From positions 124,001-188,000 of the IMG/VR virus record IMGVR_UViG_3300045961_000282: a DNA stretch of 64,000 nt; one strand, 5' to 3'. Under the pieces are notes generated by a model. That model had not been told where the DNA came from. It was given only the letters and a program-made list of their open reading frames with translations, and ran no database searches. Positions within the stretch are counted from its first letter, which is position 1, and each line of letters begins with the position of its first letter. The position numbers and the translations under genes are program-made. Of this stretch, positions 25,587 through 57,357 are shown piece after piece.

Positions 25587-25587
25587 G

Positions 25588-40217: not shown

Positions 40218-40236
40218 CTCGACTGAGAGGAGTGAC

Positions 40237-40431: not shown

Positions 40432-40612
40432 CCAGCGCCCCGGCTTCCTCACGGAGGTCGGGGCGCTCTCGTGTGTACGTGCGCGCGACCGGCTCGTCGA
40501 TCGCTCGAGCCCCACCTCGACGACTTCGGGGGTCGTATGGTTCGGTTTGCATTAGGGCACCGCGGTCTGTATAGTTGTAGCCATCACCACCACCACGACG
40601 AAAGGAACTGAC

Positions 40613-40843
40613 ATGGTGAAGATTGAGTTCGAGACGAACAACGAGGCGTTCGCCGACGCCCCCGGCATCGAGATCGCCCGCATCCTGCGGCGGCTCGCCG
40701 ACACGCTGGAGCCTGCCATGGGCGGCGACTGGGGACCCCTGCTCATCAAGGACACCCTCGGCAACACGGTGGGCGCCGCGCGGGTGCAGGTGTGCCGCTC
40801 CGACTGCCTGCTGGCCGACGGTCACCCCGGCGAGTGCGTCTGA
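40613..40843 (+). CDS. hypothetical protein
   Basis: TTGCAT/TATAGT promoter, A/C leader, RBS; NEAFAD..EIARIL..D.LGNTVG pattern. Confidence 0.7.
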   Translation: MVKIEFETNNEAFADAPGIEIARILRRLADTLEPAMGGDWGPLLIKDTLGNTVGAARVQVCRSDCLLADGHPGECV

Positions 40844-40918
40844 GTTTGACATGGGCAGGCGATAGGCGTAATGTTAGTCATGTAAGAACAACAACACCAC
40901 AGAGAGAGCGAGAATGAG

Positions 40919-41146
40919 ATGACGTTCACGATGGACCTGCGCGGTTCGGGGGTCTACTCCTACGACGAGGAAGTCGCCATCGAGTGTGAGTGCGGCTCCA
41001 CGGAGGGCACCCGGTTCGTTGACGACTGGAAGGTCGCAGTAGTCACCTGCGACAACTGCCAGATGGAGCAGCCCGAGGAGGACGACGAGGACCCCGACTA
41101 CGCGCGGGACCTTTGGTTGGAGCAGGAGTACGAGGACCGCTACTGA
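40919..41146 (+). CDS. acidic zinc-ribbon protein
   Basis: CECG and CDNC; TTGACA promoter. Confidence 0.65.
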   Translation: MTFTMDLRGSGVYSYDEEVAIECECGSTEGTRFVDDWKVAVVTCDNCQMEQPEEDDEDPDYARDLWLEQEYEDRY

Positions 41147-41256
41147 CCCCGAAGGCCCCCGGGAAACCGGGGGCCTTCGTCATTGCCGCGTTTGACGTTT
41201 GACACAACGGGCATACTGGAATGAGCACGACCACCAACAACACGAAAGGACCACCT

Positions 41257-42222
41257 ATGAGCATCCGCACTGACACCTATGCGCTGGCCACGTCGGCTGG
41301 CCGCAAGCCCGGCACGCCGGGCCACGACGACGCGGTGGCCTACCTGCGCTGCCGCTTCGCCGACCTCGACCTGCTTCCCTACAGGGACACCGACGACTGG
41401 GAGCACTCCTACACCGCCAAGGCGCGCGGCAGGCGCGTCACCATGACCAACCTGATCGGCGTGATCCCCGGCACCGACCGCACGCTGGCGCCCATCGTGA
41501 TCGGCGCGCACTATGACTCGGTGATCGAGTCCTACTGCGCCGACGACAACGCCTCGTCCGTGGCAGTCGTCCTCAACGTGGCCGAGCGCCTGAGCGCCGC
41601 GCCCCTGCGCCGCGACGTGGTGATCGCCGCGTTCGATGGTGAGGAACCGCCGTTCTTCCACTCTCCCGCGATGGGATCGACCCGTCTGGTGGAGGACGTG
41701 CTGGGCGAGGTCCACCTTGCCATCGTCATGGACCTGATCGGCCACCCGACCACACTACCCGGCACCGACCCGCACCTGTCCGTGGTGACCGGCGTCGAGT
41801 CGCACCCGAACCTGCGCAGCGCGCTGATCGGGGTTGACCTGCCGCTGCTGGTCGTGGACAACAAGCGGGTCGGCGACATGAGCGACCACCACGCCTTCCG
41901 GCTGGCGGGCAAGCCGTTCCTGTTCCTGTCCTCCGGCGAGTGGGAGCACTACCACACCGAGGACGACCTGCCCGAGTACCTCGACTACACGAAGTTGCAG
42001 CGGGTCGCCGATGCTGTCGAGCGGTTCGCCCGCAACGCCGACGTGGTGGAACTGGGCGCTGCGCAGCCGCACGACATTGAGGACTTGGAGGCGGCGCGCT
42101 TCGACACCCACCTGCCCGCCGACCTCATCGAGCCGCTGCGCCACGGGGTGTCCACCCGCGAGGCCCTGCCGTACATCATCGGCGGACTGCGGGCGTCGAT
42201 GTGGGGCGAGCGGTTCGCCTAA
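41257..42222 (+). CDS. M28-family metallopeptidase
   Basis: GAHYDS, ADDNASS, FDGEE, MDLIG, SDH..F, YHT.DD. Confidence 0.88.
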   Translation: MSIRTDTYALATSAGRKPGTPGHDDAVAYLRCRFADLDLLPYRDTDDWEHSYTAKARGRRVTMTNLIGVIPGTDRTLAPIVIGAHYDSVIESYCADDNASSVAVVLNVAERLSAAPLRRDVVIAAFDGEEPPFFHSPAMGSTRLVEDVLGEVHLAIVMDLIGHPTTLPGTDPHLSVVTGVESHPNLRSALIGVDLPLLVVDNKRVGDMSDHHAFRLAGKPFLFLSSGEWEHYHTEDDLPEYLDYTKLQRVADAVERFARNADVVELGAAQPHDIEDLEAARFDTHLPADLIEPLRHGVSTREALPYIIGGLRASMWGERFA

Positions 42223-42301
42223 CTTGCTCTCTGCCACTGGCAGCGGTATAGTTGTCGGTGTGAGCGAGGGAGAGTCCCCCGCCGAACCGGAAGGAAACCT
42301 C

Positions 42302-42466
42302 ATGGCGAAGAACAGGGTGCCCGCGGGCGCCACGGCCAAGACGCCCGCGCAGGTGCAGGCCACTCTGGCCCTGCGCACCAGCGGAGCCAGCGGGCGGCAC
42401 GACTCGCGCCCGAAGCGGGCCAGAACCCGCGCCGCCAGCAAGCGTGCGGCCCTGCGGGAGTTCTAG
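42302..42466 (+). CDS. 54-aa basic peptide in a class-II leader cassette
   Basis: Promoter, leader, RBS and terminator; R/K-rich. Confidence 0.6.
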   Translation: MAKNRVPAGATAKTPAQVQATLALRTSGASGRHDSRPKRARTRAASKRAALREF

Positions 42467-42579
42467 TCCCCCCAGCCAGAAGCCCCAGCGAAACCCGCTG
42501 GGGCTTCTTGACTTTTGGGGCCAGAATCGGTATCGTAGATACGCGATAGAGAACACGACCAACACGAAAGGACAACGAC

Positions 42580-43326
42580 ATGACGACGACTGAACGCAAC
42601 GAGCGGATCGTTCAACTGGCCGCTGACGGCTGGACCCTAGCAGCGATCGGCACCGAGGTCGGGCTGACTCGCGAACGAGTGCGCCAGATCCTCAACGACC
42701 ACGGCACGCGCACCCTGCGCCACGACGACCTGCTGGCCAAGGCAGCCGCCGACTGGCGGGCGAGCGGGCAGGTCAGGCACGCGCACGACGTGCTGCGCGA
42801 GCACCGCCTCGCAGCCAACAGCCGCAACATCGCGATGCTGCGCCGGGCCGTGCCGGAACTGTGCCTGCCCGCCAGCCGCGAGCAGGCCACGACATGGACC
42901 GAGGGCGCCATCGTCTCCGCGGTGCGTGACCTCGCCCGCCAGCACGGGTTCGACTTCGCGGGCGGCTGGATGCGGCTGAAGGACTACACCCGCCTGCGCG
43001 GCCCGCACGACCCCGCCCCGGCGACCATCGGTGCGAACTTCCTGTGGAGCGATATCGCGGTGAAGGCGGGCTTCAACCCGGCCAACGCCCCGCGGCGCGG
43101 GCGGCGCGGCGGCACGCGGCCCCGGCAGATCGCGCAGGCCGACCTCGACAACGCCGTGCTGGACTACATCGGCAGCGGCGAGCGGCTGAGCGCGGCGGGC
43201 TTTGAGCAGTACCTGAAGGACCGCCCCCACCTGCCGTCGATGGCCACGATCCGCAACCGCTTCCGCGCGGAGGGGATCAACACCATCGCCGGAATCTTCA
43301 CCGACGTGCAGGAACGGCTCGGCTGA
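42580..43326 (+). CDS. DNA-binding protein: sigma70 region-4-like HTH plus homing-endonuclease-associated repeats
   Basis: TLAAIGTEVGLTRERVRQI; WTEGAIVSAV..PATI..W..AG; PSMATIRNRF. Confidence 0.65.
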   Translation: MTTTERNERIVQLAADGWTLAAIGTEVGLTRERVRQILNDHGTRTLRHDDLLAKAAADWRASGQVRHAHDVLREHRLAANSRNIAMLRRAVPELCLPASREQATTWTEGAIVSAVRDLARQHGFDFAGGWMRLKDYTRLRGPHDPAPATIGANFLWSDIAVKAGFNPANAPRRGRRGGTRPRQIAQADLDNAVLDYIGSGERLSAAGFEQYLKDRPHLPSMATIRNRFRAEGINTIAGIFTDVQERLG

Positions 43327-43565
43327 TCCGAACCGAACGCCCCCGACTCCGGTGAGAAGTCGGGGGCGTTCGCGTATACGCGCGCGACCGGCGCTCGAGG
43401 ACGTCCGGCCGCCGAAGTCGACGAGTTCGGCGGCCGTATGGTTTGCGGACCCTTCGGCCCTTCAGGGCCCTTCGGTCCTTTGGGACCCTTTTTGACAGGG
43501 CCAGCCGCATCCCGTATTGTTGTAGTCACAACAGCACGACCAACAACACCACAGAGGAGAACGAC

Positions 43566-43808
43566 ATGGCACGCATCACGTGCGCCCACTGCAAGCAGAC
43601 CCACGCCACGGTGGCCGAGGTTCGCGAATGCGCCTACGAGCAGTACGAGGGCGAGGCACAGGCCCGCGCCGAGCACGAGGCCGAGATGGCCATCGAGCGG
43701 TACTTCGAGGATCGCGGGTGGTACGAGGCGGCGTTGCAGGAGGAGATGGAGGCCCGCATGGGCGTCATCGGATTCGCCGAAGCAATGGCCTTGGCCGAAG
43801 GCCGCTGA
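43566..43808 (+). CDS. hypothetical zinc-binding protein
   Basis: CAHC..H...EVREC; promoter and RBS. Confidence 0.65.
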   Translation: MARITCAHCKQTHATVAEVRECAYEQYEGEAQARAEHEAEMAIERYFEDRGWYEAALQEEMEARMGVIGFAEAMALAEGR

Positions 43809-43903
43809 ACAGCACGGAGCCCCGGTTCCCCATCAAGGGAACCGGGGCTTCGTCGTTGGTGCAGGAGCCCGGCACTGTCGCTTCAATGCCGGGCTCCTGC
43901 GGC

Positions 43904-44230
43904 CTACTTGGCGAACAGCCGCAGGATGTTGGTGCGGCGCATCAGCGCCTTGTCGTCGCGGTCCATCCGCCCCAAGCCGGTGAAGGTGTAACCCTTCTCG
44001 TAGGCGTAGGTGCCAGTCACGATGTAGCCATTGCGATCCAGAATCTGCTTGCGCCGCGACTCGCACACGGTGCAGACCAGCACGCGCTCAACGTCGCCGC
44101 CCGGCAGCCATGCCGCCGAGTCAGGCTTCCAGTTGTGGCCCATGTCCCGACAGGCGAGGAATGGATCGGGGTAGCGCTTGAGAATGTCAGCGACCTTCTG
44201 CGAATGCAGGTTCTTCTTCGGGGAAGCCAT
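43904..44230 (-). CDS. hypothetical zinc-binding protein (leaderless)
   Basis: CRD.GH.W and CTVC; TAGCAT -10. Confidence 0.65.
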   Translation of the reverse strand: MASPKKNLHSQKVADILKRYPDPFLACRDMGHNWKPDSAAWLPGGDVERVLVCTVCESRRKQILDRNGYIVTGTYAYEKGYTFTGLGRMDRDDKALMRRTNILRLFAK

Positions 44231-44254
44231 GAGCGTGATGCTATCACAGGCCTA

Positions 44255-45037
44255 TCAAGGCTCCACGCTGGTCAGCCACGCCCACGACTTGCCGTTCTTG
44301 ATGTTGCTAACCGTCGCCTGAGATACCTCGAAGTTCCTTGCGATGACGGGTTGTAGGTCCGTCGAACGATAGATCGCCAGAACCACATCTTCAGTCAGTT
44401 TTGCCCGACTGCGCTTCGGCTTCGGTGCACCGGTCGGTCTGGTCAAGTGTGCCCACGTGTTTCCGTAACGGATGTTTTTGACCGTTGATAATCCAATCCC
44501 GTAGGACTGCGCGATGTTTGCATGAGAGTCGGGCGAGTGATAAATCGCCAGCACGATCTCATCGGTGAGTTTGGCCCGAGGGCTGCGTCCGCCTCTCAGG
44601 ATGTTTCCATCAGCCTCTCGGTCCGCCATGTTCTCAAGGACTGTCCCCCACGCGAGATGGTTCGGATTGACGCACCAGCGGGTCTCGGACCCGCACTTGT
44701 GTAACGCCTGCTTGCCTTCCGGGCAGGGCCCATTGAGGAGAGTGCATGCATACCGGTGGGCGCGATGCTTCTCGTTCTTATAGGAGAAGGACGAGTACCC
44801 ATCCTGATCCACCTTGCCGGTCCAAACCCAATGGTCCTCGGGCTCATCACCGGGCTGCGCGTAGAACCAGAATGCCTCCTCGATGGAGGTAAACGCGGGA
44901 TGGAGCCGCTCGAAACCATCTCCCTCATGCCATCGCCACCGCTGGTAGTGCTTCTTGCACATCCCCCGAGCCTCGTGCGGCAGCGCGCAGGGCCGTCCAT
45001 CTGTAACAACCTCACATGCACGGGATGCTCTCGCCAT
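44255..45037 (-). CDS. HNH homing-type endonuclease with a duplicated C-terminal HTH
   Basis: GMCKKHYQRW, AHRY, ALHKC..WCVNPNHL.WGT..EN, KLT..V.AIY x2. Confidence 0.9.
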   Translation of the reverse strand: MARASRACEVVTDGRPCALPHEARGMCKKHYQRWRWHEGDGFERLHPAFTSIEEAFWFYAQPGDEPEDHWVWTGKVDQDGYSSFSYKNEKHRAHRYACTLLNGPCPEGKQALHKCGSETRWCVNPNHLAWGTVLENMADREADGNILRGGRSPRAKLTDEIVLAIYHSPDSHANIAQSYGIGLSTVKNIRYGNTWAHLTRPTGAPKPKRSRAKLTEDVVLAIYRSTDLQPVIARNFEVSQATVSNIKNGKSWAWLTSVEP

Positions 45038-45079
45038 GGGCTCTACCGTACATTACAGTCCGATGGATCGCCAGAACCA

Positions 45080-45361
45080 CTAAAGCCCAATGATGCCTCC
45101 TGCTCCCCGCAGTTCCACTGTCGCGACTCCGACTGCGACTCCTTGGAAGCCCATCTCATTCACCACGTCTGCAAGCGATTGGACGACTTGATACGGGTCC
45201 ACGTCATTGCCGTGGGCCACCGTCATGGTGATGGTGGTGACATACGCCTCGACGTTCGGGTCGGCAACGAACTCCCCGCCCTCGTACCCGCGCGCGACCG
45301 GCTCGTGCTCGTGCGGCTCGCCGCTGTCGTGACTGTGCTCGTGCTGCCAGTTCTTCGTCAT
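45080..45361 (-). CDS. hypothetical protein with a His-rich N-terminus
   Basis: Leaderless TAGGCT promoter. Confidence 0.55.
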   Translation of the reverse strand: MTKNWQHEHSHDSGEPHEHEPVARGYEGGEFVADPNVEAYVTTITMTVAHGNDVDPYQVVQSLADVVNEMGFQGVAVGVATVELRGAGGIIGL

Positions 45362-45370
45362 GGTCGCAGC

Positions 45371-45859
45371 CTAGAACTTCGTGCCCGGCGCCCACGCCGC
45401 CGACAGGCGCAAACAGAACTCGACGGCGGGCGACATCGGCCAGACTTCGGAGGGGGCGAACCATATGTCGGTCGCCAACGGGCTGCGAACGTGGTCGACC
45501 GGCACCTCGGGCAGCGCAGGCCCCGGCCCCTCGGGCGCGAAGGCGTGCGGGCGGCCCCACATGTCGAGCACCGCCTCGACGTTGCGCGGGTCGCCCGTCT
45601 GGAAGGTCACGCCGCTCGGCTTGGCGTAGAGCCACGCATAGCGCTCGCCCGGCACCGCGCAGGTGACGTAGTGCGTCTTGAAGCCCGGCTGGACGTTGAA
45701 CTTCAGGTCCGGCTCGTACTCGGGCAGCCAGCACAGGAAGTCCCGCACCTCACTGGGCAGGGACTCGACCCCCTCGACGCGGTTGGCCTCGAAGAACTCG
45801 ATGGCTTCCTCGGGGGTGTCGAACAGGTGGGGGGTGCGGAACAAACGTGGCTTGCTCAT
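45371..45859 (-). CDS. hypothetical protein
   Basis: AAGGA RBS; GC3 bias. Confidence 0.6.
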   Translation of the reverse strand: MSKPRLFRTPHLFDTPEEAIEFFEANRVEGVESLPSEVRDFLCWLPEYEPDLKFNVQPGFKTHYVTCAVPGERYAWLYAKPSGVTFQTGDPRNVEAVLDMWGRPHAFAPEGPGPALPEVPVDHVRSPLATDIWFAPSEVWPMSPAVEFCLRLSAAWAPGTKF

Positions 45860-45966
45860 GGGAAACATCCTTTCTGTCGATGGCAGGACCCCTTTGGTCC
45901 CGTCCGTGTGTGAAGGGTACGCGAAAGGCCCGACCCCCCATAGGGAGCCGGGCCGTGACGAGGCCG

Positions 45967-46479
45967 TCAGGCGGCTGCGTGCACGCGGCGCAGACGCGCC
46001 TCGCACACCGGGCCGATCCCCCGCGCCGCGCTCTGCGTCGCAGTCAGGGACCGCCCGCAGACCACGCAGAAGCCGTAGCCGTTGGACAGCCGCCCAGCCT
46101 CCTCGACCGTCAGGGGCGTGAGGCCCTCGGCGGCGAGGTTGCGCCCGGCACCCGGGGCGTAGACCCACCGGCCCCGGCGAGCGCCGGACTCGGTGACGTG
46201 GGCCTCCAGCCGCTTGGCGTAGGTGGCCGTGCCCGCCTTGTTGGGCACGACGACGAACACCTCCTCGCCGCGGACGTAGTAGCCCTCGGTCGCGGCCTGC
46301 GCCGGGGCGGCAGCCACGCGCGGCGCGGCCATCAGGCGGTCGATGAACCGGCTCGCGTTGCGAGCAGTCATGTCGGCACGGGCGTCGAACAGCACCTGAG
46401 CCTCGGCGTCGAGCACGCGCTCGGTGGCGAGGCGCTCAAGAAAAGCGAGTTGGCGGGGGGTGATCATCTTGACGGGCAT
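45967..46479 (-). CDS. DUF6011-like zinc-finger protein
   Basis: C-terminal CVVCGRSLT...S.ARGIGPVC; A/C leader and RBS. Confidence 0.75.
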   Translation of the reverse strand: MPVKMITPRQLAFLERLATERVLDAEAQVLFDARADMTARNASRFIDRLMAAPRVAAAPAQAATEGYYVRGEEVFVVVPNKAGTATYAKRLEAHVTESGARRGRWVYAPGAGRNLAAEGLTPLTVEEAGRLSNGYGFCVVCGRSLTATQSAARGIGPVCEARLRRVHAAA

Positions 46480-46740
46480 TGTCAGTTCCTTTCGGTTGGT
46501 GGTGGTGGTGGCTGACAGACCTAAGCATAGCACCAGAATCAGGGGGAGTTCAAATCGACAGACTCGGCGGAGCGGGGTCCCGGGCGGCCCTCGAGGTCGT
46601 CGACCGAACCATACGGACCCCCGGCGGCCCTCGAGGGCGGGCCTACGACTTTCCTCGGCGAGCACTTCGAGCCCGGCCCGCCGGTCGCGCGCACACACGA
46701 GAAGGCCCCGACCCCCGAAGGGGCCGGGGCCTCCCCCCGA

Positions 46741-47088
46741 TCAGAACGAGAAGTCGAAGAACTTGTCCCGGTAACCGATGGCCAGCGTGCCGCCGTTGCC
46801 CTCGAAGCGCCCGCTCTTGCGCAGCGCGAAACGCTCGACCGAACGGTTCGGGTTCGGCAGGAACACGTACTCCTGCGACTCCGACATGCCGTTGCGGTCC
46901 ACCCGCTGGGTGTCGTCGCGCTGGGCGAGCACGGCCTTGACCTGCCCGGCGCAGGCACCGGACTTGAACCGCTCGACCCCGACGATCGTGTACGGGAGAC
47001 GGTCGGACCACATCAGCAGCGTGGCGCCCATGCCCACCTCGGGCTCGGGGGCGCCGATGGTGCTGGCGGCGAGAATGTTGTTGATCAC
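46741..47088 (-). CDS. conserved phage hypothetical protein
   Basis: PEVGMGAT..WSDR motif; promoter and RBS. Confidence 0.7.
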   Translation of the reverse strand: MINNILAASTIGAPEPEVGMGATLLMWSDRLPYTIVGVERFKSGACAGQVKAVLAQRDDTQRVDRNGMSESQEYVFLPNPNRSVERFALRKSGRFEGNGGTLAIGYRDKFFDFSF

Positions 47089-47367
47089 TTGCTTCCTCCT
47101 TGGTGGTCGTCGTTGTGGTACAACCATACCACCGCATTAGTAGTGATGTCCAACTGGCTGGGTGATCGCAGACCCTCGCGCCTCACGTGTGCGCGCGACC
47201 GGCGGGCCGGGCTACGGACTAGCCCGCCGAGTTTGTGTCAGACCCCCGTCGCATGATGGAGGCACAACAGAACAGGGAGCACGGATTATGCGATCCGCAC
47301 TAGGTTGTGTATTGTTATCCATGTGAACAGGGACAGGCCCTGATCCGCTCAGTAGGAAGGACTCGCC

Positions 47368-47601
47368 ATGAGGCCCCGTCGCACGATCACCTTCTCCACC
47401 CACACGCCGATCCGCGTGAACGCCTTGGAGGCGTACATGCCCTTCGTCGTCGAGACCTCGCCCATCGGCCCGGCCTACGCCGTGACCATGGCGCCGACCG
47501 CGACCCTCAACGGACTCGACGATGAGGACACCCGTCGCGGGATCGTCTGCCCGCTCTGCTTCGTGGAGCAGGGACTCACGGGAGTCTGCGACTCCCACTA
47601 G
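47368..47601 (+). CDS. hypothetical protein with a C-terminal CPxC..CD motif
   Basis: RBS GAAGGA. Confidence 0.6.
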   Translation: MRPRRTITFSTHTPIRVNALEAYMPFVVETSPIGPAYAVTMAPTATLNGLDDEDTRRGIVCPLCFVEQGLTGVCDSH

Positions 47602-50009: not shown

Positions 50010-50270
50010 ATGCAGTTCACTGACACCTACTTCGAGGGGCGCATCGGCACCACGCTCGTCATCTTCGACTCGATCTACGAGGTCGAGTTCGACATCTCCA
50101 CGGGTGACGTGGAAGGCCTGCGCTTGCAGGGGGAGTCCGTCGACTTCGACCACGCCCTGCTCGCCATCCTGTCCGAGACGGTCGACTTCGAGCGGATCGG
50201 CGACCGGCTGATCGACGCACTGGAAGCAGCCAAGGCCGATATCGAGGCCGCGCTCAACGAGGGCGACTGA
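50010..50270 (+). CDS. acidic hypothetical protein
   Basis: Hairpin promoter, leader, RBS. Confidence 0.65.
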   Translation: MQFTDTYFEGRIGTTLVIFDSIYEVEFDISTGDVEGLRLQGESVDFDHALLAILSETVDFERIGDRLIDALEAAKADIEAALNEGD

Positions 50271-50272
50271 CC

Positions 50273-50635
50273 ATGCTCAACACTCCGAGCGACCGCGCCA
50301 TCGCGGCCAACGCGATGCTGCACTGCGCCCTGTGGTCATCCACGGACGAGGACAGTGAGCCGCTGGATGCGTCCTACGACCCGCGCGACATCGCGCCCGC
50401 CACGGTGGCGGCGCTGACGGGCGACCTGTTCGACTTCATCGACGCCGAGATTGCCGACCTGATCGACCTTGACGCCAGTCAGGTCGGCCATGACTTCTGG
50501 CTCACGCGGAACCACCACGGAGCCGGATTCTGGGACCGTGGACTGGGCGAGGTCGGCAAGCGCCTGACCACGGCCGCGCAGGCGTTCGGCGAGGTCACCC
50601 TCTACATCGGCGACGACGGCTGGATCTACGCCTGA
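50273..50635 (+). CDS. conserved phage hypothetical protein
   Basis: GHDFWLTRNHHGAGFWDR motif. Confidence 0.75.
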   Translation: MLNTPSDRAIAANAMLHCALWSSTDEDSEPLDASYDPRDIAPATVAALTGDLFDFIDAEIADLIDLDASQVGHDFWLTRNHHGAGFWDRGLGEVGKRLTTAAQAFGEVTLYIGDDGWIYA

Positions 50636-50700
50636 CTTGACGAAACTCGGGCTGACAAGGTAAGGTTGTACCAACACCACAACGACGAAAGGAAACAACA

Positions 50701-51033
50701 GTGATTCTTCCCGAGATCAACAAGAGGCGCCGCGGCCATCGGTTCTACCCGATCTGGACCGACGAGGTGCCCGCCCTACGCAGCACCGAGGGTCAGGATG
50801 ACCCGATGGTCCGCGCCCACTACTTCGTGGGCTCGTGGGACTGGTACGTCGTCGAGTGGGACCCCGAGACGGGCGAGGCGTTCGGCTTCGTCAAGGGCCT
50901 CGATGAGGAACTGGGCTACTTCTCGCTGGTCGAGATGGAGGCCACCCTCGCCCGCGGCCTGTTCCCCATCGAGCGTGACCTCTACTGGGACCCGGTGCCG
51001 CTGAGCACCATCACCCGAACGGTGCGTGCCTGA
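50701..51033 (+). CDS. DUF2958-like protein
   Basis: WDWYVVE.DP....FG.V.G...ELGYFSL.E. Confidence 0.75.
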   Translation: MILPEINKRRRGHRFYPIWTDEVPALRSTEGQDDPMVRAHYFVGSWDWYVVEWDPETGEAFGFVKGLDEELGYFSLVEMEATLARGLFPIERDLYWDPVPLSTITRTVRA

Positions 51034-51090
51034 CCCCACGCGCAAAGGCCCCCCGCATCCGACATGGGATGCGGGGGGCCTTTGCCGTGC

Positions 51091-51258
51091 CTAACCCTTG
51101 GGCAGGATGCGGGTCATCTTCGTGCCGCACGCCGGACAGGTCCCCTTGGCCAAGCGAGTGGTCCGGTTGCCCTTCACCGACAACTCGATGGCACCCGTGA
51201 ACTCCCGCTTCGCCTTGCACTTCACGCAGTAGGCCTCGCCTGTGTAGGTGTCGCTCAT
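51091..51258 (-). CDS. DUF5679-like zinc-ribbon protein
   Basis: AYCVKCKAKRE...KGTCPACGTKM.RI. Confidence 0.75.
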   Translation of the reverse strand: MSDTYTGEAYCVKCKAKREFTGAIELSVKGNRTTRLAKGTCPACGTKMTRILPKG

Positions 51259-51413
51259 CAGCATCTCCTTCGTGTGTGCGTGCACACTACACGCGCGCGC
51301 GACCGGCTCGAGCCGCCGCCGGAGCCTCACCAGACCTCGATTGGGTGGGTGTCCTAGCGGCGTGCTATGCTTTGCAGGCAACAACCACCAACACAACCTG
51401 AAAGGAGAACAAC

Positions 51414-51605
51414 ATGACTCGACTTCCCGCAGGAGGAGAAACTCCCGCAGAGCGCATCGCCGTCCTTGAGGAGTTCATGGCGCTGGAGGAGCAGATTGCT
51501 CCCGCCGCGGACCCTGCCGCTCGCATGGAGGCGCTGCTGCTACTCGATGCCATGTCCGGGGGACTACCCCGGCACCCCAATGCCGCTGGCCCCCTGAACG
51601 TCTGA
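51414..51605 (+). CDS. 63-aa hypothetical protein
   Basis: Promoter, A/C leader, RBS. Confidence 0.6.
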   Translation: MTRLPAGGETPAERIAVLEEFMALEEQIAPAADPAARMEALLLLDAMSGGLPRHPNAAGPLNV

Positions 51606-51703
51606 GAGCACGACGCAGCGGATTTGCAAGATTTCGCTGCGTCGTGCTAGTGTTATTCCATAACCACCTAGCAACACCACCACCACCTGAAAGGATCACC
51701 ACC

Positions 51704-54226
51704 ATGACCACTGCTGCTGACCGCGCCAAGGCGCTCGCCGCGAAGTACGCCGCCACCACGAGTGAGCGCCAGCATGACCAGAACTTCATCCGCGACTTCG
51801 TGGGCGTGTTCACCGACCGCGACCCCGCGGACATCTTCCGGTTCCAGTACCCCGTCGAGACCCCGCGCGGCACGACTGGCGCGATCGACGCCCTGTGGGA
51901 GAGCCACATCCTGTTCGAGATGAAGTCGGCGGGCAAGGACCTGCACGCAACCCTCAAGGATCAGGTGCGCCCCTACGTCGCCCATCTGGCCCCGGCGAAG
52001 CACCCGCAGATGTACATCATCAGCGACTTCCAGAACTTCCTCGTCGTGGACCCCGACGGCACCAAGCACGAGTTCCCACTGGCGGACCTGCACGCCCACG
52101 TGTCCCTGTTCACCCCGATCTTCGACGGCCTCCCGGCCTACCTGCGCAGCCACGGCACCGTGAACGAGCAGGCGGCATCGCTGCTGAGCGCGGTCCTCAA
52201 GGGCCTGCGGAAGAACGGCTACTCCGAGACGGACCTGCCCGCGCTGGCCACCCGGTTGCTGTTCGCCCTGTACGCCGACGACAACTACGTCTGGAAGAAC
52301 GGCACGTTCCACGGCGACGTGCTGGGCACCCCGGCTGACGGGGCCACCCTTGGCCGTGTGATCGACGGCATCTTCCGACTGCTCGACAGCCCGAACGCCG
52401 ACGCAACAGACTACTGCTACATCAACGGCAGCATGTTCGCCGGGGACATCGCGGTGCCCGTGTTCGACGCGGATACCCGTGAGGCGCTGCTGGAGGCCTG
52501 CGAGTACGACTGGCGCGGCTTGGACCCGATGATCTTCGGGACGATCTACCAGTCAGCGATGGACGCCGACGAGCGCCACGCGGAGGGCGCGCACTACACC
52601 CACGAGCAGGACATCCTCGACGTGCTGGGTCCGGCGTTCCTCGACAACCTGAAGGCGCAGTATGCCGCCGCACAGGGGAGCGCGACCAAGTTGCGCAACT
52701 TCCTCAAGCGCCTGTCGGAGATCGAGGTCCTCGACCCGTCGTGTGGATCGGGCAACTTCCTCATGGTGGCCTACCGCGAGTTGCGCGCGCTGGAGACCGC
52801 CGCGTCGCTCGACCTCGCGGCGGGCGGCGCCAAGACGATCCCGGCGCAGCGCGTGTCACTGGCGCAGTTCCACGGCATCGAGTACAACGCCCTGTCGGCA
52901 TCGGTGGCCCGCACGAGCCTGTGGCTCACGCTGCACGCCGCCGATCAGCGGCACACCGAGGCAATGGGCGAGTTGATGTGGGACACGTTCCCGCTCAAGG
53001 ACGTGGCCGACATCCGGCACGCGAACGCGGTCACGACCGACTGGAACGCCGAGTTCCCGAACCTGACGGCCATCGTCGGCAACCCGCCGTACATCAGCGC
53101 GAAGAAGGAGCGCGACGGCGGACAGAATGCCCAGCAGGTCGCGGAACGCAAGGCGCTGGGCATCAAGGGCGGGATGATGGACTACGCCCACATCTGGATG
53201 GTCAAGTCTGCGCAGTACATCGCCGAGTTCCCCGATACCCGGTCAGGTCTCGTGGTGACGGATTCCGTCGCACAGGGCACGCAGGCATCGGGCCTGTGGT
53301 CACACCCGGCCATGCAGGACGTGTACCCGATCTTCGGGCGGCAGTCCTACGTCTGGCCCGGCGATGCATCGGTGCGCGTGGTGAACTACGGCCTTGGCTC
53401 CAAGCCTGAGGCAGTCGAGTTGCGCGCCGAGGATCGCAGCATGATCCCGGCTGCCTACCTGACCCCCTACCTCACGCCGACCGACATCCCCTCGCGGGCC
53501 ACGGCCAACGTGTCGCGCACGGCCCCGGCGTGGATGGTGAACCTGAAGAACGGTACTTCGTATGCCGACTTCGGCCACTACGCCAAGTTGGGCGACGACC
53601 TCGCGGTCATCCAGCGCGACCATCCCGAGATGCTGGTGAACAAGGTGTCATCCTCGAACCTGCTGTCAGGCAAGGATGATCCGGTGCTGTGGTTCGGAAA
53701 CCGAACCTCGAAGGCTGTGGCTCACAAGGCCATCGCGCCACGGCGCGAGGCTGTGCGGATCAAGCGTGGCGCCGGGCACCCGAAGGGACCGGAGTGGGTT
53801 CCGTCGTCCGTGGTCACCGGGACGTTCATGGTGGTGCCCGCGACGTTCAGCAAGAGTTACGAGCGCACGCCCGTCGTGATCCTGTCGGGCACGAACTACA
53901 TGACCCAGAAGGTCTACTACGCCCCGGTGGATTGGTTCATGGCCGGGCTGGTCATGTCCAAGCGCGCGATGGACGCCCAGATCGCAGGCGGCAGCAAGAT
54001 GGGCAAGGGCGGCGACGTTCAGTACGGCACCGGCTACCTGTACGGGATGCCTGCCCCGACCAACGACACCCCCGAGTTGCGGGCCAAGATCGCGGCCAAG
54101 GCACAGGAGTGCATCGCCGCCCGGCCCGGCCCGGCAGCCGAGTGCATGAAGGTCACCAACATGCCCGAGTCGCTGGCGAAGTTGCACCGCGAGTTGGACG
54201 CGCTGGTCGATGAGTGGTGGGGCTGA
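51704..54226 (+). CDS. MmeI-like type IIL restriction-modification enzyme (endonuclease-m6A methyltransferase fusion)
   Basis: IDALWESHILFEMKSAGKDL (PD-ExK), YINGSMF, DPMIFG, GAHYT, LDPSCGSGNFL, GIE, IVGNPPY. Confidence 0.88.
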   Translation: MTTAADRAKALAAKYAATTSERQHDQNFIRDFVGVFTDRDPADIFRFQYPVETPRGTTGAIDALWESHILFEMKSAGKDLHATLKDQVRPYVAHLAPAKHPQMYIISDFQNFLVVDPDGTKHEFPLADLHAHVSLFTPIFDGLPAYLRSHGTVNEQAASLLSAVLKGLRKNGYSETDLPALATRLLFALYADDNYVWKNGTFHGDVLGTPADGATLGRVIDGIFRLLDSPNADATDYCYINGSMFAGDIAVPVFDADTREALLEACEYDWRGLDPMIFGTIYQSAMDADERHAEGAHYTHEQDILDVLGPAFLDNLKAQYAAAQGSATKLRNFLKRLSEIEVLDPSCGSGNFLMVAYRELRALETAASLDLAAGGAKTIPAQRVSLAQFHGIEYNALSASVARTSLWLTLHAADQRHTEAMGELMWDTFPLKDVADIRHANAVTTDWNAEFPNLTAIVGNPPYISAKKERDGGQNAQQVAERKALGIKGGMMDYAHIWMVKSAQYIAEFPDTRSGLVVTDSVAQGTQASGLWSHPAMQDVYPIFGRQSYVWPGDASVRVVNYGLGSKPEAVELRAEDRSMIPAAYLTPYLTPTDIPSRATANVSRTAPAWMVNLKNGTSYADFGHYAKLGDDLAVIQRDHPEMLVNKVSSSNLLSGKDDPVLWFGNRTSKAVAHKAIAPRREAVRIKRGAGHPKGPEWVPSSVVTGTFMVVPATFSKSYERTPVVILSGTNYMTQKVYYAPVDWFMAGLVMSKRAMDAQIAGGSKMGKGGDVQYGTGYLYGMPAPTNDTPELRAKIAAKAQECIAARPGPAAECMKVTNMPESLAKLHRELDALVDEWWG

Positions 54227-54497
54227 CCTACCCCACGCCCCCGAAACCCCCCGGTTCCCCTGTGGAGCCGGGGGGTTTTGCGTGCTCGCCTCACGCGTAC
54301 GCGCGCGCGACCGGCAACCCTCGAGCGTTGATCGAGACTCCTCGAGACTCCTCCGGGAGGCCGTATGGTTCGCCGCCGGTGTTTGTGTCAGACCCCTGCC
54401 GCACACTGCCTGCACCAAACAGGATTTGGCGCAGGCAGGAAACTGCTGCTATGCTTGACCCACAACAGCACGACCACCACTACCGAAAGGACACACC

Positions 54498-54893
54498 ATG
54501 ACCACACATGCCGTTGCCCTCCCCGATGCGACCCTCGACCGGATCGCCGACGACCGCTCGATTGCCTACCGCTGGGAGCGCCCCGACGTTGACGTGCCCG
54601 ACAAGATGGACGACCACGGCGTCCGGTACGCGGAGTTGTACGTCTACCACTCCAAGCACAGCAAGGAGTACGTCGCGATGCTGCACATCATCGACGTGTT
54701 CCCGGGGTGGATCCAGTCGCACATCTCCCCGCGCCACGGCATCACGATCCTCAAGCGCCCCGTTGCGCGTCACAGCGCCAAGGCGCTGCAGCAGCACGCC
54801 AACGAGGCCATGCAGGTGATGATCGACCACATGGACGACAGCCGCGTGGCGACCCTGTTCAGCGGCCACCCGCTGCCGGACTCCCGCGCCTGA
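54498..54893 (+). CDS. hypothetical protein
   Basis: A/C leader and RBS. Confidence 0.65.
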   Translation: MTTHAVALPDATLDRIADDRSIAYRWERPDVDVPDKMDDHGVRYAELYVYHSKHSKEYVAMLHIIDVFPGWIQSHISPRHGITILKRPVARHSAKALQQHANEAMQVMIDHMDDSRVATLFSGHPLPDSRA

Positions 54894-54977
54894 TCCCACC
54901 ACGGAGGGCCGATTCGACAAGGGTCGGCTCCCCGTGGTAAGGTTCTACCAACACCACAACGACGAAAGGACACCGAC

Positions 54978-55304
54978 ATGAGCACGACGATCATCACGTT
55001 CGGCCCCGACCAGCGCCCCGAGCCCGGCGCCTACTTCGTGATTCGCGGCTGCGACCACGAGGCCGCCCGTGCCATCGCGTTCGCCCTGTTCGGCCCCGAG
55101 TTCTGCACGTCCTACGACGGCGACTCCGAGCGCGGGGCGAACATCCTCGACAACCCCGAGCGCACCATGATCGGCGGCGTCGAGGTTCACCTGCCCCCGA
55201 CCGGCGACCTGCCCGGCGAGTCCTCGCCGCTCATCGACGCCATGCGCCGCGGCGAGGCCCTGTTCATCGACGAGGCTGTCCTGACTGACGGGGACGACCA
55301 GTGA
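54978..55304 (+). CDS. hypothetical protein
   Basis: Hairpin promoter, leader, RBS. Confidence 0.65.
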   Translation: MSTTIITFGPDQRPEPGAYFVIRGCDHEAARAIAFALFGPEFCTSYDGDSERGANILDNPERTMIGGVEVHLPPTGDLPGESSPLIDAMRRGEALFIDEAVLTDGDDQ

Positions 55305-55867
55305 CCCGCCGCCTGAGCGAGTTCGCCAGCAACGGCGCCAACCGCTCGTGGAAGGTCGAGGACGACGGGCGGACCACGACGGTCACCCTGTGGACCATCG
55401 CGCTGCACGAGCCGACGTGTCGGTTCGCCAAGACCAACAGCCGCGGCGGGCCGTATCAGGTCCACGACTACCTGCCCAACTACGGGCAGGACAACCTGAA
55501 CTGGCTCAAGGTGCGCGGCGTGGACGGCCCGGCAGCCAGCGACCGCACCGTCGCGTGGACCGGCTGCAAGGTGTGCGGCACCGCCTCCATTCCCCGCGCT
55601 GAGTGGGGGGCGATGGTCGACGTCATGCGCGACGAGTGGGCCGAGGCCGACCGCCGCGAGCGGCTCGAGTACGCGGCCAAGCGAGCCGTCGAGGATGCCC
55701 GCGACGCCCGCAACCGCTACATCGCTGAGGCCGAGGCCGATGCCTACGACGCGGAGTTCCGCGACACAGTGGAGGCCCGCATGGCCGTGGTCCGTGCTGC
55801 CGCCCGCGCCAAGTGGGAGGCCGACAACGCCGAACTGGCGATGCTGCTGGGGGGCGACCATGCGTGA
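55301..55867 (+). CDS. hypothetical protein (Cys/His motifs, coiled-coil tail)
   Basis: GTGA overlap. Confidence 0.6.
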   Translation: MTRRLSEFASNGANRSWKVEDDGRTTTVTLWTIALHEPTCRFAKTNSRGGPYQVHDYLPNYGQDNLNWLKVRGVDGPAASDRTVAWTGCKVCGTASIPRAEWGAMVDVMRDEWAEADRRERLEYAAKRAVEDARDARNRYIAEAEADAYDAEFRDTVEARMAVVRAAARAKWEADNAELAMLLGGDHA

Positions 55868-56060
55868 GCGCCCCGGCCCGTCGTGGCCGTCGTTCTCCTT
55901 CGGCCTGCTGGTGCTGGTCGCCCTGCTCGTCACGGCGATGTACCGCGCTGAGCAGCGGCACCTGACCGAGACCCGCGACATGTGTCTGGCCGCAGCGGAC
56001 ACCGAGTACCAGAAGGACTCGTGCATCCGCGAGTACGAGATCAACTCCGGCTGGTTCTGA
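55860..56060 (+). CDS. small membrane protein
   Basis: TM helix; overlaps the previous stop. Confidence 0.55.
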   Translation: MRERPGPSWPSFSFGLLVLVALLVTAMYRAEQRHLTETRDMCLAAADTEYQKDSCIREYEINSGWF

Positions 56061-56118
56061 GTCCCGACGGGGATTTGACAGAACCGACGGGGAGCGCATA
56101 TGCTTTTACTAGAAGCGG

Positions 56119-56190
56119 ATCCGAGAGCGCAGGTTGAGCCGGACGGTCTCCAAAACCGTCTTCGTGAGAGTTCGAATCTCTCCTCGGGTG
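56119..56190 (+). tRNA. trnW: tRNA-Trp(CCA), short atypical D-arm, no encoded CCA
   Basis: Acceptor ATCCGAG/CTCGGGT, G73, anticodon arm ACGGT-CTCCAAA-ACCGT, T-arm GAGAG-TTCGAAT-CTCTC; TTGACA/TATGCT promoter. Confidence 0.8.
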
Positions 56191-56325
56191 CTGGCGCGAG
56201 TCAGGCGCGGAATCGGCAGCGAATGAGTCTGCAACGGCGCTGAAAGCCGAGAAAAGGGTCCCCTCGACCGCAGACCGGGGGGACCTGCCTGACACCACCA
56301 TCACCATCACGACGAAAGGAGCGAC

Positions 56326-56529
56326 ATGATGAAGGTCACGCACGGGATCCCCGTGCTCAACGGCAGGATCGAACTGAGCATCGACGAGTTCGACGGCACG
56401 CCGATCATCAAGATCCGCAGCGATGAGGACTGCTGCGACGACCAGACCATCCTGCACCTGAACGACAGTCAGGCTCGAATCCTGCTGGCGAGCCTGCGGA
56501 TGGCGCTGCGCGACCTGAAGGAGGGCTGA
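56326..56529 (+). CDS. hypothetical protein
   Basis: Leader and RBS. Confidence 0.6.
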   Translation: MMKVTHGIPVLNGRIELSIDEFDGTPIIKIRSDEDCCDDQTILHLNDSQARILLASLRMALRDLKEG

Positions 56530-56532
56530 GCA

Positions 56533-57141
56533 GTGGGTCAGTATTGGACCCCTGTGCTGAGTTCCGCCGCGTCCGCCGCCGACTTCACCGAGCGCATCGA
56601 CGGCTGGGCCTACTCCCACGACTGGAAGAACGGCCTCAAACTCATGGAGCACTCATGGGTCGGCAACAAGTTCGTGGACGCCATCGTGCGCGATCTGGTG
56701 TCCCGCCCGCGGCGCCTCGTGTGGGCGGGCGACTACGCAGACCCTGAGCCGGGCGTGCTCGTCAACGGAGATCTCGCGACCCTGTACCACTACGTCTACG
56801 AGACGGTGCACCTCGCGCCGTACCAGATCAAGCCCGCCGACCACGACAGGGTCTACCCGGCGCGCTATCTGGTCAATCACGACCTGAAGGTGTTCGTGGA
56901 CATGAAGAACCTGCCCGAGGACCGCGAGGGCTGGCAGATCCACCCGCTGCCGCTGCTGACCGCCGAAGGCAACGGGCGCGGCGGCGGCGACTTCGGCGGT
57001 CATGGCGGGCGGCACTCCAAGGATGCGGTCGGCTCATGGGCGCGCCACGAGATCAGCGTGCTCCCTGCGTCATCGTGGAAGCGCTTCGAGAGCCTGAAGC
57101 GCATGGGGTACGCCGAGGTCGTCCCCGAGTTCATGGAGTAA
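56533..57141 (+). CDS. conserved phage hypothetical protein
   Basis: MGQY, GLKLMEHSWVGN.FV, VWAGDYAD, HPLPLLTAEGNGRGGGD. Confidence 0.75.
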   Translation: MGQYWTPVLSSAASAADFTERIDGWAYSHDWKNGLKLMEHSWVGNKFVDAIVRDLVSRPRRLVWAGDYADPEPGVLVNGDLATLYHYVYETVHLAPYQIKPADHDRVYPARYLVNHDLKVFVDMKNLPEDREGWQIHPLPLLTAEGNGRGGGDFGGHGGRHSKDAVGSWARHEISVLPASSWKRFESLKRMGYAEVVPEFME

Positions 57142-57357
57142 TCCCCCGAACAAGAACCCCCGGCGTGCCCCTCGCGTCGGGGGTTCTTCGTGTGTACGCG
57201 CGCGCGACCGGCGGCTCGAGGTGAGGCTATGACTTTCTCGAGCCTCCTCCGGTGGGCCGTATGGTTCGCCCCGTTCCCTCGATTTGTTACGTTCCGAATC
57301 CACGTGCTATGCTTGGGGCAACACCGCACCACCACCACTACGACGAAAGGACTTCTC

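What the first reader, a model, noticed from the sequence alone, without database searches (positions are those of the whole stretch)
40482..57268. A composite ~65-90 bp module (CGCGCGACCGG - CTCGAG - [TCGACGA] - CGTATGGTTCG) sits between cassettes
Seen: six times the 11-mer follows a terminator, then CTCGAG, often TCGACGA, then CGTATGGTT(C/T)G 52-76 nt later, ahead of the next promoter. Copies: 40482/40534, 43381/43435, 46691/46615 (inverted along with its gene), 49424/49492, 54304/54362 and 57201/57258. A related TGTGTCAGACCCC box follows at 47233 and 54385. Inference: a multi-protein operator, or a recombination joint that shuffles promoter-gene-terminator cassettes in this hyperplastic arm (integron- or PeSL-like).
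Basis: partly seen in the sequence, partly recalled or inferred. Interest (0 to 1): 0.62.

Follow-up and report, generated by a model that had tools for sequence, protein, structure and literature searches.

The report
Repeated regulatory joints between phage cassettes
In one arm of a 206-kb uncultured actinobacteriophage, a strictly conserved asymmetric DNA box and a promoter-like box recur behind terminators between small gene cassettes; they are almost the only intergenic letters kept in related metagenomic phages, so they are most likely binding sites of a transcription regulator, and cassettes often differ at them.

Summary
CGCGCGACCGG (box A) is the commonest 11-mer of a 206-kb IMG/VR phage genome: 28 exact copies, 25 of them in 44 kb (window 21-64 kb). 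Six A-to-B pairs lie 52-76 nt apart (0 of 20,000 permutations reach six). A seventh module has a variant box B. About half of the box A copies lie outside the modules: two abut a -10 element and about eleven lie inside genes.

Five metagenome contigs from relatives carry the same layout: terminator, CTCR-(YR)n-box A, box B, then a sigma-70-like promoter. Box A, box B and a TTGTGTCA box are the only conserved islands in otherwise diverged intergenic DNA. One intragenic copy is kept between homologues that are 48% identical.

Intergenic copies nearly always point the way the downstream genes are transcribed.

My best reading is a stoperator-like operator or roadblock for a phage DNA-binding protein, placed ahead of tandem promoters.

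An integron-like mechanism is not supported. The genome has no integrase, the modules show no attC-like fold, and the cassettes carry their own promoters.

A PeSL-like role as crossover points is plausible. Gene content differs downstream of three of four conserved modules in a relative. The association is not significant, and the assembled contigs show no alternative joints.

The parts
21087..63717 (.). Cluster of 25 exact copies of box A (CGCGCGACCGG; extended form TACGYG-CGCGCGACCGG-C), plus about 5 variants that differ only at the first base. 19 copies are on + and 6 on -.
33775..33987 (+). Module 1. Box A 33775-33785, CTCGAG 33796-33801, box B variant TATGGTTCG 33829-33837. The hexamer ends 6 nt before the ATG (33841) of a 48-aa zinc-ribbon-like ORF, which is the geometry of a leaderless transcript.
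40430..40575 (+). Module 2. Terminator hairpin 40430-40473 (-32 kcal/mol), box A 40482-40492, CTCGAG 40504-40509, TCGACGA 40517-40523, box B 40534-40544, sigma-70-like promoter 40546-40575.
   Evidence: conserved in L069
43332..43520 (+). Module 3. Terminator 43332-43375, box A 43381-43391, CTCGAG 43394-43399, TCGACGA 43418-43424, box B 43435-43445, promoter 43492-43520.
46524..46733 (-). Module 4, inverted together with its genes. Terminator 46690-46733, box A 46681-46691, CTCGAG 46630-46635 and 46590-46595, box B 46605-46615, extended -10 at 46524-46532.
   Evidence: homologous module in L069 at 7954-8080
47182..47246 (+). Partial module 5. Box A 47192-47202 and TTGTGTCAGACCCC box at 47233, with no box B. 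Positions 47182-47213 form a 32-nt, 94% inverted repeat with 46670-46701; the pair flanks the minus-strand gene 46741-47088.
   Evidence: (I2, D10)
49424..49523 (+). Module 6. Box A 49424-49434, CTCGAG 49440-49445, TCGACGA 49474-49480, box B 49492-49502, TTGTGTCA box at 49510. No strong hairpin upstream.
51296..51371 (+). Partial module 7. Box A 51296-51306 directly followed by CTCGAG 51307-51312, then an extended -10 (TGCTATGCT) at 51363-51371.
54238..54455 (+). Module 8. Terminator 54238-54281, box A 54304-54314, CTCGAG 54320-54325 and 54341-54346, box B 54362-54372, TTGTGTCA box at 54383, extended -10 at 54447-54455.
57149..57313 (+). Module 9. Terminator 57149-57192, box A 57201-57211, CTCGAG 57215-57220 and 57237-57242, box B 57258-57268, extended -10 at 57305-57313. 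The downstream gene starts at 57358.
63536..63771 (+). Two box A copies (63536-63546 and 63707-63717) flanking tRNA-Cys (63551-63623, minus strand), followed by the palindrome AACCATA-N5-TATGGTT at 63753-63771.
32868..32898 (-). Box A 32888-32898 lies 5 nt upstream of an extended -10 (TGCTATGCT), so it occupies about -28 to -18 of that promoter.
37857..37879 (+). Box A variant TGCGCGACCGG (37857-37867) lies behind terminator 37810 and 6 nt upstream of the TAGGCT hexamer of the extended -10 TGCTAGGCT (37871-37879).
45291..45301 (+). Intragenic box A, antisense within gene 45080-45361(-). It encodes a conserved EPVAR island in an otherwise variable N-terminal tail, and is kept at the same place in the L069 homologue (48% identity).
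42580..43326 (+). Candidate binding protein (inference only). 248 aa, N-terminal sigma-70 region-4-like HTH followed by helical modules of the homing-endonuclease-associated-repeat kind. Conserved at the same place in L069.

Best explanation
The module is conserved transcriptional punctuation of an accessory-gene arm, made of autonomous promoter-gene-terminator cassettes, in a lytic-looking actinobacteriophage lineage.

Box A, in full CTCR-(YR)n-CGCGCGACCGG, is an asymmetric binding site for a sequence-specific protein, probably phage-encoded. It sits just behind the terminator of one transcription unit and points toward the next one. There it acts as a polar roadblock or insulator, and where it abuts a -10 element it acts as an operator that occludes the promoter. 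This works like the operators and stoperators of Cluster A mycobacteriophages.

Box B (CGTATGGTTCG) is a second, independent element 40-70 nt downstream. It is a -10-like hexamer (TATGGT) that lacks the TG extension of the phage's regular promoters. Most likely it is a regulated secondary promoter or a regulator half-site, lying upstream of the regular sigma-A-type promoter and its CA-rich leader.

Because these boxes are the only sequence shared between otherwise unrelated cassettes, they probably also serve incidentally as crossover points.

Shown: the anatomy, the copy number, the orientation rule, the conservation in relatives, and the absence of recombinase genes. Inferred: protein binding, the direction of the regulatory effect, and the identity of the binder.
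For: 1. Statistics. There are 28 exact copies, 25 of them in 44 kb; controls and shuffles are far lower.

2. Phylogenetic footprint. In alignments of three homologous intergenic regions with relative L069, box A (13-15 nt), box B (11-12 nt) and the TTGTGTCA box are identical or nearly so, while the spacers are unalignable. The same order (terminator, box A, box B, sigma-70-like promoter) recurs in L038, L051, L062 and L063.

3. Selection on the DNA itself. The antisense copy inside gene 45080-45361 is kept in a homologue that is 48% identical, as an EPVAR island in a variable tail, together with its upstream CTCG.

4. Orientation. By my count, 15 of 16 intergenic copies in the window, and all intergenic copies in the relatives, point the way the downstream genes are transcribed. 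Intragenic copies are mostly antisense (11 against 3).

5. Position. Box A lies 10-38 nt behind strong hairpins. In three cases it lies 5-6 nt upstream of a -10 hexamer, covering about -29 to -18: window 32888 and 37857, and L069 2371.

6. The distance from box A to box B varies (15, 42-49, 59 and 67 nt), so box A is not a fixed part of the box B promoter.

7. Box B. Its TATGGT hexamer ends 6-7 nt before the ATG of two ORFs, which is leaderless geometry. The regular promoters use TGcTATGGTT or TGcTATGCTT (D3/D4). Promoter-like sites are enriched, 9 against 1.9.

8. Gene content. DNA-binding proteins are encoded in the arm. The 248-aa sigma-region-4-like modular protein is conserved in L069, and is absent from the distant relative G001, which also lacks box A.
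Against: No binding protein has been shown. The candidate rests on domain content and weak co-occurrence only.

The phage has no integrase or ParB, so a lysogenic repressor of the L5 kind is unlikely. A lytic-cycle regulator has to be assumed instead.

About half of the copies are intragenic and antisense, which the roadblock model explains only after the fact.

The palindromes AACCATA-N5-TATGGTT favour reading box B as a regulator half-site rather than a -10 element.

No RNA data exist for this phage.
Confidence: 0.5

Rival explanations
1. The main role of the modules is to be recombination joints of the PeSL kind. Short conserved terminator/promoter modules provide the homology through which cassettes are swapped, inverted, deleted or circularised in a hyperplastic arm.
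For: In L069 the genes downstream of three conserved modules differ from those in the window (after w40482, w43381 and w47192). The homologue of w47368 follows a different module in L069.

In L062 and L038, box A modules sit at junctions that differ among three genomes. L051 shows the order box A, gene, box A, gene, box A, gene.

A 32-nt, 94% inverted repeat that includes box A flanks the inverted gene 46741-47088 (I2).

The arm also holds true PeSL-like hairpin promoters (definition in PMC2839356).
Against: Conserved identity between relatives is only 13-17 bp per box.

Of 13 comparable junctions, 5 of 6 with box A and 2 of 7 without it are variable. That gives a one-sided Fisher p of about 0.08, and the relatives were found by searching for the module itself, which biases the sample.

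Homology to L069 starts at the start codon of the swapped gene, not at the module.

HNH homing-endonuclease indels explain other breakpoints.

Contigs of the only run are collinear, with no joints at the modules.

The model explains neither the conserved intragenic copy nor the strict orientation rule.
Confidence: 0.2
2. Box A is itself a promoter, or a promoter element, for phage-specific transcription machinery: an unrecognised phage RNA polymerase, a sigma factor, or a sigma appropriator of the MotA kind acting at about -30.
For: The motif is long, asymmetric and almost invariant, and always points toward the downstream genes. Some copies lie inside upstream coding sequence, as T7-type promoters do (my own knowledge).

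In three places it replaces the -35 and spacer of an extended -10 promoter.

The conserved 248-aa protein begins with a sigma region-4-like HTH.
Against: No RNA polymerase was found with PF00940 or with PHROGs scans of the large ORFs. The PF00940 search had no positive control.

The distance from box A to the nearest -10-like element ranges from 5 to 67 nt. Most intragenic copies would produce antisense RNA.
Confidence: 0.12
3. The element is structural DNA. The alternating pyrimidine-purine tract that ends in box A flips to Z-DNA under transcription-driven supercoiling, and so buffers or insulates neighbouring transcription units.
For: Twelve of the 28 alternating tracts of 13 nt or more in the genome lie at box A, including three of the four 18-nt tracts. 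The spacer between CTCR and box A is mostly (YR)n of even, variable length. The position is between a terminator and the next promoter.
Against: The invariant ACCGG end, and copies with short tracts (for example 23448 and 34198), fit sequence-specific recognition better. Long alternating tracts also occur elsewhere in the genome without box A.
Confidence: 0.05
4. Box A is the target of a site- and strand-specific nuclease or nickase, comparable to the localised nicks of T5 or phiKMV-like phages, or to a homing-endonuclease target.
For: There is a strand bias of 19 + against 6 -. Four HNH_3 genes lie in the arm. HNH genes are indel polymorphisms between the relatives.
Against: Orientation follows local transcription (46681 and 32888 are inverted together with their genes) rather than one strand of the genome. 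The data are contigs and cannot show nicks. Repeatedly cutting its own genome would need a protection mechanism that has not been seen.
Confidence: 0.04

Closest known systems
Operators and stoperators of Cluster A mycobacteriophages (L5 gp71, TipsytheTRex repressor; PMC9283540)
   Same: An asymmetric site of about 13 bp in more than 20 copies. It occurs both at promoters and in intergenic spaces behind genes, and its orientation correlates with the direction of transcription. The host group is actinobacteria.
   Different: The sequence is unrelated. Copies are confined to 44 kb of a 206-kb genome instead of spread over the whole genome. About half are intragenic and mostly antisense. No integrase or partition genes were found and no Cluster A-type repressor was detected. 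The site is bipartite, with a variable (YR)n spacer, and is coupled to a second box (box B).
PeSLs (promoter-early stem-loops) of T4-like phages (PMC2839356, PMC4122927)
   Same: Composite terminator-plus-promoter motifs repeated in a hyperplastic arm full of small genes of unknown function. Gene content differs between relatives next to them.
   Different: A PeSL is only a sigma-70 promoter overlapping a stem-loop. This arm has such junctions as well (47601, 48219, 49924, 51606, 54896, 58388, 61277). The finding adds two further conserved boxes that PeSLs lack. Recombination at the modules and mini-circles have not been shown here.
Integron attC sites and gene cassettes (my own knowledge of the family)
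   Same: A repeated element separates single genes or small groups of genes in an array. The L051 contig shows this most clearly.
   Different: There is no integrase, no imperfect inverted-repeat fold and no RYYYAAC/GTTRRRY core sites. The cassettes carry their own promoters and terminators.
Morons of lambdoid phages (promoter-gene-terminator units; my own knowledge)
   Same: The cassettes are autonomous transcription units, each with its own promoter and terminator.
   Different: Morons are not bounded by a shared, conserved sequence box.

Membership tests
Cluster A-type stoperator system | Asymmetric site of about 13 bp present in more than 20 copies | tested here: met
   28 exact copies, with core YGCGCGCGACCGG.
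Cluster A-type stoperator system | Orientation of the sites correlates with the direction of transcription | tested here: inconclusive
   15 of 16 intergenic copies in the window, and all intergenic copies in the relatives, are co-directional. Intragenic copies are 11 antisense against 3 sense.
Cluster A-type stoperator system | Sites both at an early promoter (operator) and in short intergenic spaces throughout the genome | tested here: not met
   Promoter-abutting copies exist (32888, 37857) and so do intergenic ones. However, 25 of 28 copies lie in 44 of 206 kb, and about 12 are inside ORFs.
Cluster A-type stoperator system | Cognate monomeric repressor (N-terminal HTH plus stoperator domain) and a temperate lifestyle | tested here: not met
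   No integrase, resolvase or ParB was found. A profile of the only conserved HTH protein matches sigma region 4 and no solved phage repressor. Foldseek found no match.
PeSL (T4-like phages) | Sigma-70-like early promoter combined with a stem-loop terminator in one short intergenic motif | tested here: met
   Hairpins of -30 to -36 kcal/mol lie upstream, and sigma-70-like promoters lie downstream within about 60-210 nt. The compact hairpin-promoter junctions of the same arm fit even better (D3).
PeSL (T4-like phages) | Preferential location in hyperplastic regions upstream of ORFans | tested here: met
   Most of the 82 arm proteins have no Pfam family. No near relative exists in GenBank phages or IMG/VR.
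PeSL (T4-like phages) | Indel and replacement end points between related phages fall at the motifs | tested here: inconclusive
   Five of 6 junctions with box A and 2 of 7 without it are variable among the window, L069, L038 and L062. One-sided p is about 0.08, the sample is biased, and the relatives are too diverged to place the joints.
PeSL (T4-like phages) | Recombination products (mini-circles, deletions) between neighbouring motifs | not testable with these tools
   Only Logan contigs of one run hold the phage. They are collinear and cannot show rare forms.
Integron | Tyrosine recombinase IntI next to the array | tested here: not met
   PF00589 and PF00239 gave no match in the 99%-complete genome, while the controls matched.
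Integron | attC: an imperfect inverted repeat that folds as a single strand | tested here: not met
   Z-scores of the seven modules run from -2.1 to +1.1, and six of the seven are -0.5 or higher.
Integron | Mostly promoterless cassettes read from a common promoter | tested here: not met
   Each cassette has its own sigma-70-like promoter and terminator.

The most novel reading that the evidence does not exclude
Box A arrays form a recombinase-free cassette system. A polar boundary element (CTCR-(YR)n-CGCGCGACCGG) is bound by a modular protein built from a sigma-region-4-like HTH and homing-endonuclease-type repeats. This element both insulates super-cassettes of about 2-3 kb transcriptionally and is the preferred crossover point at which promoter-gene-terminator units are exchanged among a lineage of large actinobacteriophages. 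Functionally this would resemble an integron, built from regulatory DNA.
Probability: 0.12. Interest if true: 0.8.

Novelty: new variant of a known kind. Interest (0 to 1): 0.52.

Why it matters
Repeated regulatory boxes are among the few handles on gene control in uncultured phages.

Here a single 13-17-bp site marks about 25 places in the accessory arm of a 206-kb actinophage and is conserved in related metagenomic phages. That gives a testable regulon, a testable candidate binder, and a sequence tag with which further members of the lineage can be fished out of metagenomes.

If the boxes also guide cassette exchange, the PeSL idea would extend from T4-like phages of Gram-negative hosts to high-GC actinophages. 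It would also help explain how arms full of orphan genes turn over.

Tried and rejected
- **Near relatives.** Megablast of 18 kb against GenBank phages found none. Four IMG/VR scans found none either: two pattern scans gave only chance or coding matches, the terminase scan found only a distant relative without box A, and the scan with the HTH protein profile found nothing.
- **Literature.** The motif strings occur only as unrelated primers.
- **Rfam.** Only the two tRNAs were found.
- **Reads.** One freshwater-sediment run holds the phage, as contigs only. They are collinear. The contig break at 51217-51242 coincides with short high-depth contigs, not with a module joint.
- **Integron idea.** Rejected.
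- **ParB/parS idea.** Rejected; no ParB was found.
- **Phage RNA polymerase.** None was found, although the PF00940 search had no positive control.
- **Repeated peptide as the cause of intragenic copies.** Rejected, because the copies occupy all three frames. Copies inside HNH genes may be partly driven by coding (an RDR motif).
- **CTCGAG as a fixed -35 for box B.** Rejected, because the spacing is 10-27 nt and the site is absent from most L069 modules.
- **Structure of the 248-aa protein.** The AlphaFold model has mean pLDDT 78 and pTM 0.40 and shows four helical modules. It has no significant PDB neighbour.

Full report
**Context.** The window is bases 124001-188000 of a 206,257-bp IMG/VR virus record that is 65% G+C and estimated 99% complete. 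It is an actinobacteriophage. A tail protein matches Streptomyces and Microbacterium siphophages, and the arm encodes Lsr2 and WhiB. It has no near relative in GenBank phages. An intein-bearing large terminase lies at window 25588-27444(-). Left of about 37 kb the genes run leftward. Right of it runs an arm of small, mostly unknown genes on the + strand. These include an M28 peptidase, an MmeI-family enzyme, HNH endonucleases and two tRNAs.

**Observation.** CGCGCGACCGG (box A) is the commonest 11-mer of the whole genome and CGTATGGTTCG (box B) is among the top five.
- Box A has 28 exact copies against 1+1 for the reversed control. Twenty-five of them lie in 44 kb (p = 3e-14).
- The six A-to-B pairs, 52-76 nt apart, were never reached in 20,000 permutations.
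- A seventh module lies at 33775, and partial modules at 47192, 51296 and 63536/63707.
- The seven modules align over about 100 columns (alignment A1).
- The box A logo extends to TACGYG-CGCGCGACCGG-C.
- A CTCR tetramer lies 2-12 nt upstream in 17 of 28 arm copies and 11 of 18 copies in relatives, against 20% in controls. The spacer is mostly (YR)n of even length.
- CTCGAG is rare in the genome (54 copies), yet 25 copies lie in this arm and 11 inside modules.

**Anatomy of the arm.** Two kinds of junction punctuate the cassettes.
- *Compact hairpin promoters.* A hairpin of -30 to -40 kcal/mol carries a TTGACA-like -35 in its loop and a TGnTAnnnT -10 at its 3' foot, followed by a CA-rich leader and a GAAAGGA ribosome-binding site. 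They lie at 47601, 48219, 49924, 51606, 54896, 58388 and 61277. This is the anatomy described for PeSLs (PMC2839356).
- *The long module of the finding.* It recurs every 2-6 kb. Its order is terminator, then box A 10-38 nt later, then CTCGAG and/or TCGACGA, then box B, sometimes a TTGTGTCA box 10-13 nt after box B, and then a regular sigma-70-like promoter.

Box A also occurs without the rest of the module. At 32888(-) and 37857(+) it lies 5-6 nt upstream of an extended -10, which puts it at about -29 to -18. About eleven copies lie inside ORFs, in all three frames and mostly antisense.

Box B is not specific to the module. GTATGGTT precedes genes all over the genome. Its TATGGT hexamer ends 6-7 nt before the ATG of a 48-aa ORF (33841) and of the terminase gene, which is leaderless geometry. 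Twice it forms the palindrome AACCATA-N5-TATGGTT.

**Relatives.** A scan of metagenome contigs for box A followed by box B returned 44 loci. Most are chance single hits. Five carry several copies in the full context: L069 (9.8 kb, eight copies counting first-base variants), L038, L051, L062 and L063.

L069 shares genes with window 39-47 kb at 45-75% amino-acid identity. In three homologous intergenic regions, only box A, box B and the TTGTGTCA box remain identical; the spacers cannot be aligned. CTCGAG is kept in the L038/L051 lineage but is absent from most L069 modules, so it is optional.

The antisense intragenic copy at 45291 is kept at the same place in the L069 homologue (48% identity). 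It appears there as an EPVAR island in a variable N-terminal tail, together with the upstream CTCG. This is selection on the DNA rather than on the protein.

A more distant relative (G001, terminase 53% identical) has no box A.

**Orientation.** By my count, 15 of 16 intergenic copies in the window, and all intergenic copies in the five contigs, point the way the downstream genes are transcribed. The exception is 63536, which lies beside a minus-strand tRNA.

**Mechanism.** These features describe a sequence-specific, asymmetric protein-binding site that acts on transcription. They are invariance, asymmetry, an orientation tied to transcription, a place just behind terminators or on top of the -35 and spacer region, and a variable distance (5-67 nt) to the next -10-like element.

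The closest working model is the operator/stoperator system of Cluster A mycobacteriophages. That system has 13-bp asymmetric sites in more than 20 copies, at promoters and behind genes, and it depends on orientation (PMC9283540).

I therefore read box A as a polar roadblock or insulator, and where it abuts a -10 element, as an operator. I read box B as a separate regulated promoter or a regulator half-site. This is inference; nothing here shows binding.

One candidate binder is the 248-aa product of 42580-43326. It has an N-terminal sigma-region-4-like HTH followed by helical modules of the homing-endonuclease-associated-repeat kind. The AlphaFold model shows four modules joined by low-confidence linkers. 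Such a beads-on-a-string protein would suit a long bipartite site with variable spacing. It is conserved at the same place in L069 and is absent from G001.

Membership in the stoperator family fails on three counts: distribution, lifestyle genes and repressor type.

**Recombination.** The integron reading is rejected. There is no tyrosine or serine recombinase, no single-strand fold beyond shuffles, and the cassettes have their own promoters.

The PeSL-like reading has some support.
- After the conserved module at w40482/L069:522, the window has two small genes and the M28 peptidase. L069 has homologues of w47368 and w50701, another box A and two new genes. The two genomes rejoin at the homologue of w42302.
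- After w43381/L069:4181, and after w47192/L069:8600, the next genes also differ.
- L062 and L038 carry modules at junctions that differ among three genomes.
- A 32-nt, 94% inverted repeat that includes box A flanks the inverted gene 46741-47088.

The support is limited.
- Of 13 comparable junctions, 5 of 6 with box A and 2 of 7 without it are variable. That gives a one-sided p of about 0.08, on relatives that were found by searching for the module itself.
- Homology restarts at the start codon of the swapped gene, not at the module.
- HNH genes account for other indels.
- The only run that holds the phage gives collinear contigs.

Cassette exchange at the boxes is therefore a plausible by-product of their conservation. 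It has not been demonstrated as a function.

**Other rivals.**
- *Promoter for phage-specific machinery.* No RNA polymerase was found, and the spacing to the nearest -10-like element varies.
- *Z-DNA-prone insulator.* Twelve of the 28 long alternating tracts lie at box A, but the invariant ACCGG end argues for sequence-specific recognition.
- *Nick or nuclease site.* Orientation follows local transcription rather than one strand of the genome.

**Verdict.** The feature is real, conserved and lineage-specific. It is a new variant of known kinds of phage regulatory repeats. It works most like stoperators, sits in an arm built like a PeSL region, and is not an integron.

**Limits.** There are no RNA data and no raw reads. 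Only five short relatives were found, and the gene calls are my own GC3-based ones, checked against one set of public calls.

Noticed in passing
whole genome (G000): GAGCTC has no copy in 206 kb, where base composition predicts about 70. CTCGAG is depleted outside the accessory arm (29 copies in 162 kb). This looks like avoidance of host restriction sites.
   Followed up: partly
window 47601, 48219, 49924, 51606, 54896, 58388, 61277: Compact terminator-promoter junctions. A strong hairpin carries the -35 in its loop and an extended -10 at the 3' foot of its stem, followed by a conserved CA-rich leader. The anatomy is that of T4-type PeSLs, here in a high-GC actinophage.
   Followed up: partly
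window 25588-27444 (-); genome 43548-45608 (+): The large terminase subunit is interrupted by an intein (Hint domain at about residues 158-264) and carries a box A copy inside the intein. A second 686-aa ORF also shows an intein splicing domain.
   Followed up: no
genome 108008-119938 (-): A 3976-aa ORF whose only recognised domain is a DEDD/RNase_T exonuclease at residues 790-991.
   Followed up: no
window 3714-7654 (-): A pair of genes resembling the actinobacterial cslA/glxA pair: a family-2 glycosyltransferase and a galactose-oxidase-like GlxA protein, carried by a phage.
   Followed up: no
window 51704-54226 (+): A full-length MmeI-family restriction-modification/methyltransferase gene forms its own cassette between two box A modules.
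   Followed up: no
window 39457-40029; L069 6624-7220: Free-standing HNH_3 endonuclease genes are insertion polymorphisms between the window and its relative. Each sits at a different junction, and each carries a sense-oriented box A or box A variant inside.
   Followed up: partly
window 63753-63771; genome 205537-205555: Two 19-bp palindromes, AACCATA-N5-TATGGTT, built from the box B core. They suggest a dimeric binding site, or divergent -10 elements.
   Followed up: no
window 49345-49419 (+): A 24-aa hydrophobic ORF (MLLAMLIGALLAVTVSIVLVRVLA) ends 4 nt before box A at 49424, where the other modules have a terminator hairpin.
   Followed up: no
window 24895-25129: Two tandem copies of a 106-nt unit, 80% identical to each other (D11).
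   Followed up: no
window 51197-51246: Both Logan contigs of the phage end here. Short contigs of about three times the phage's depth overlap this spot, so it is a stretch shared with other organisms in the sample rather than a rearrangement joint.
   Followed up: partly
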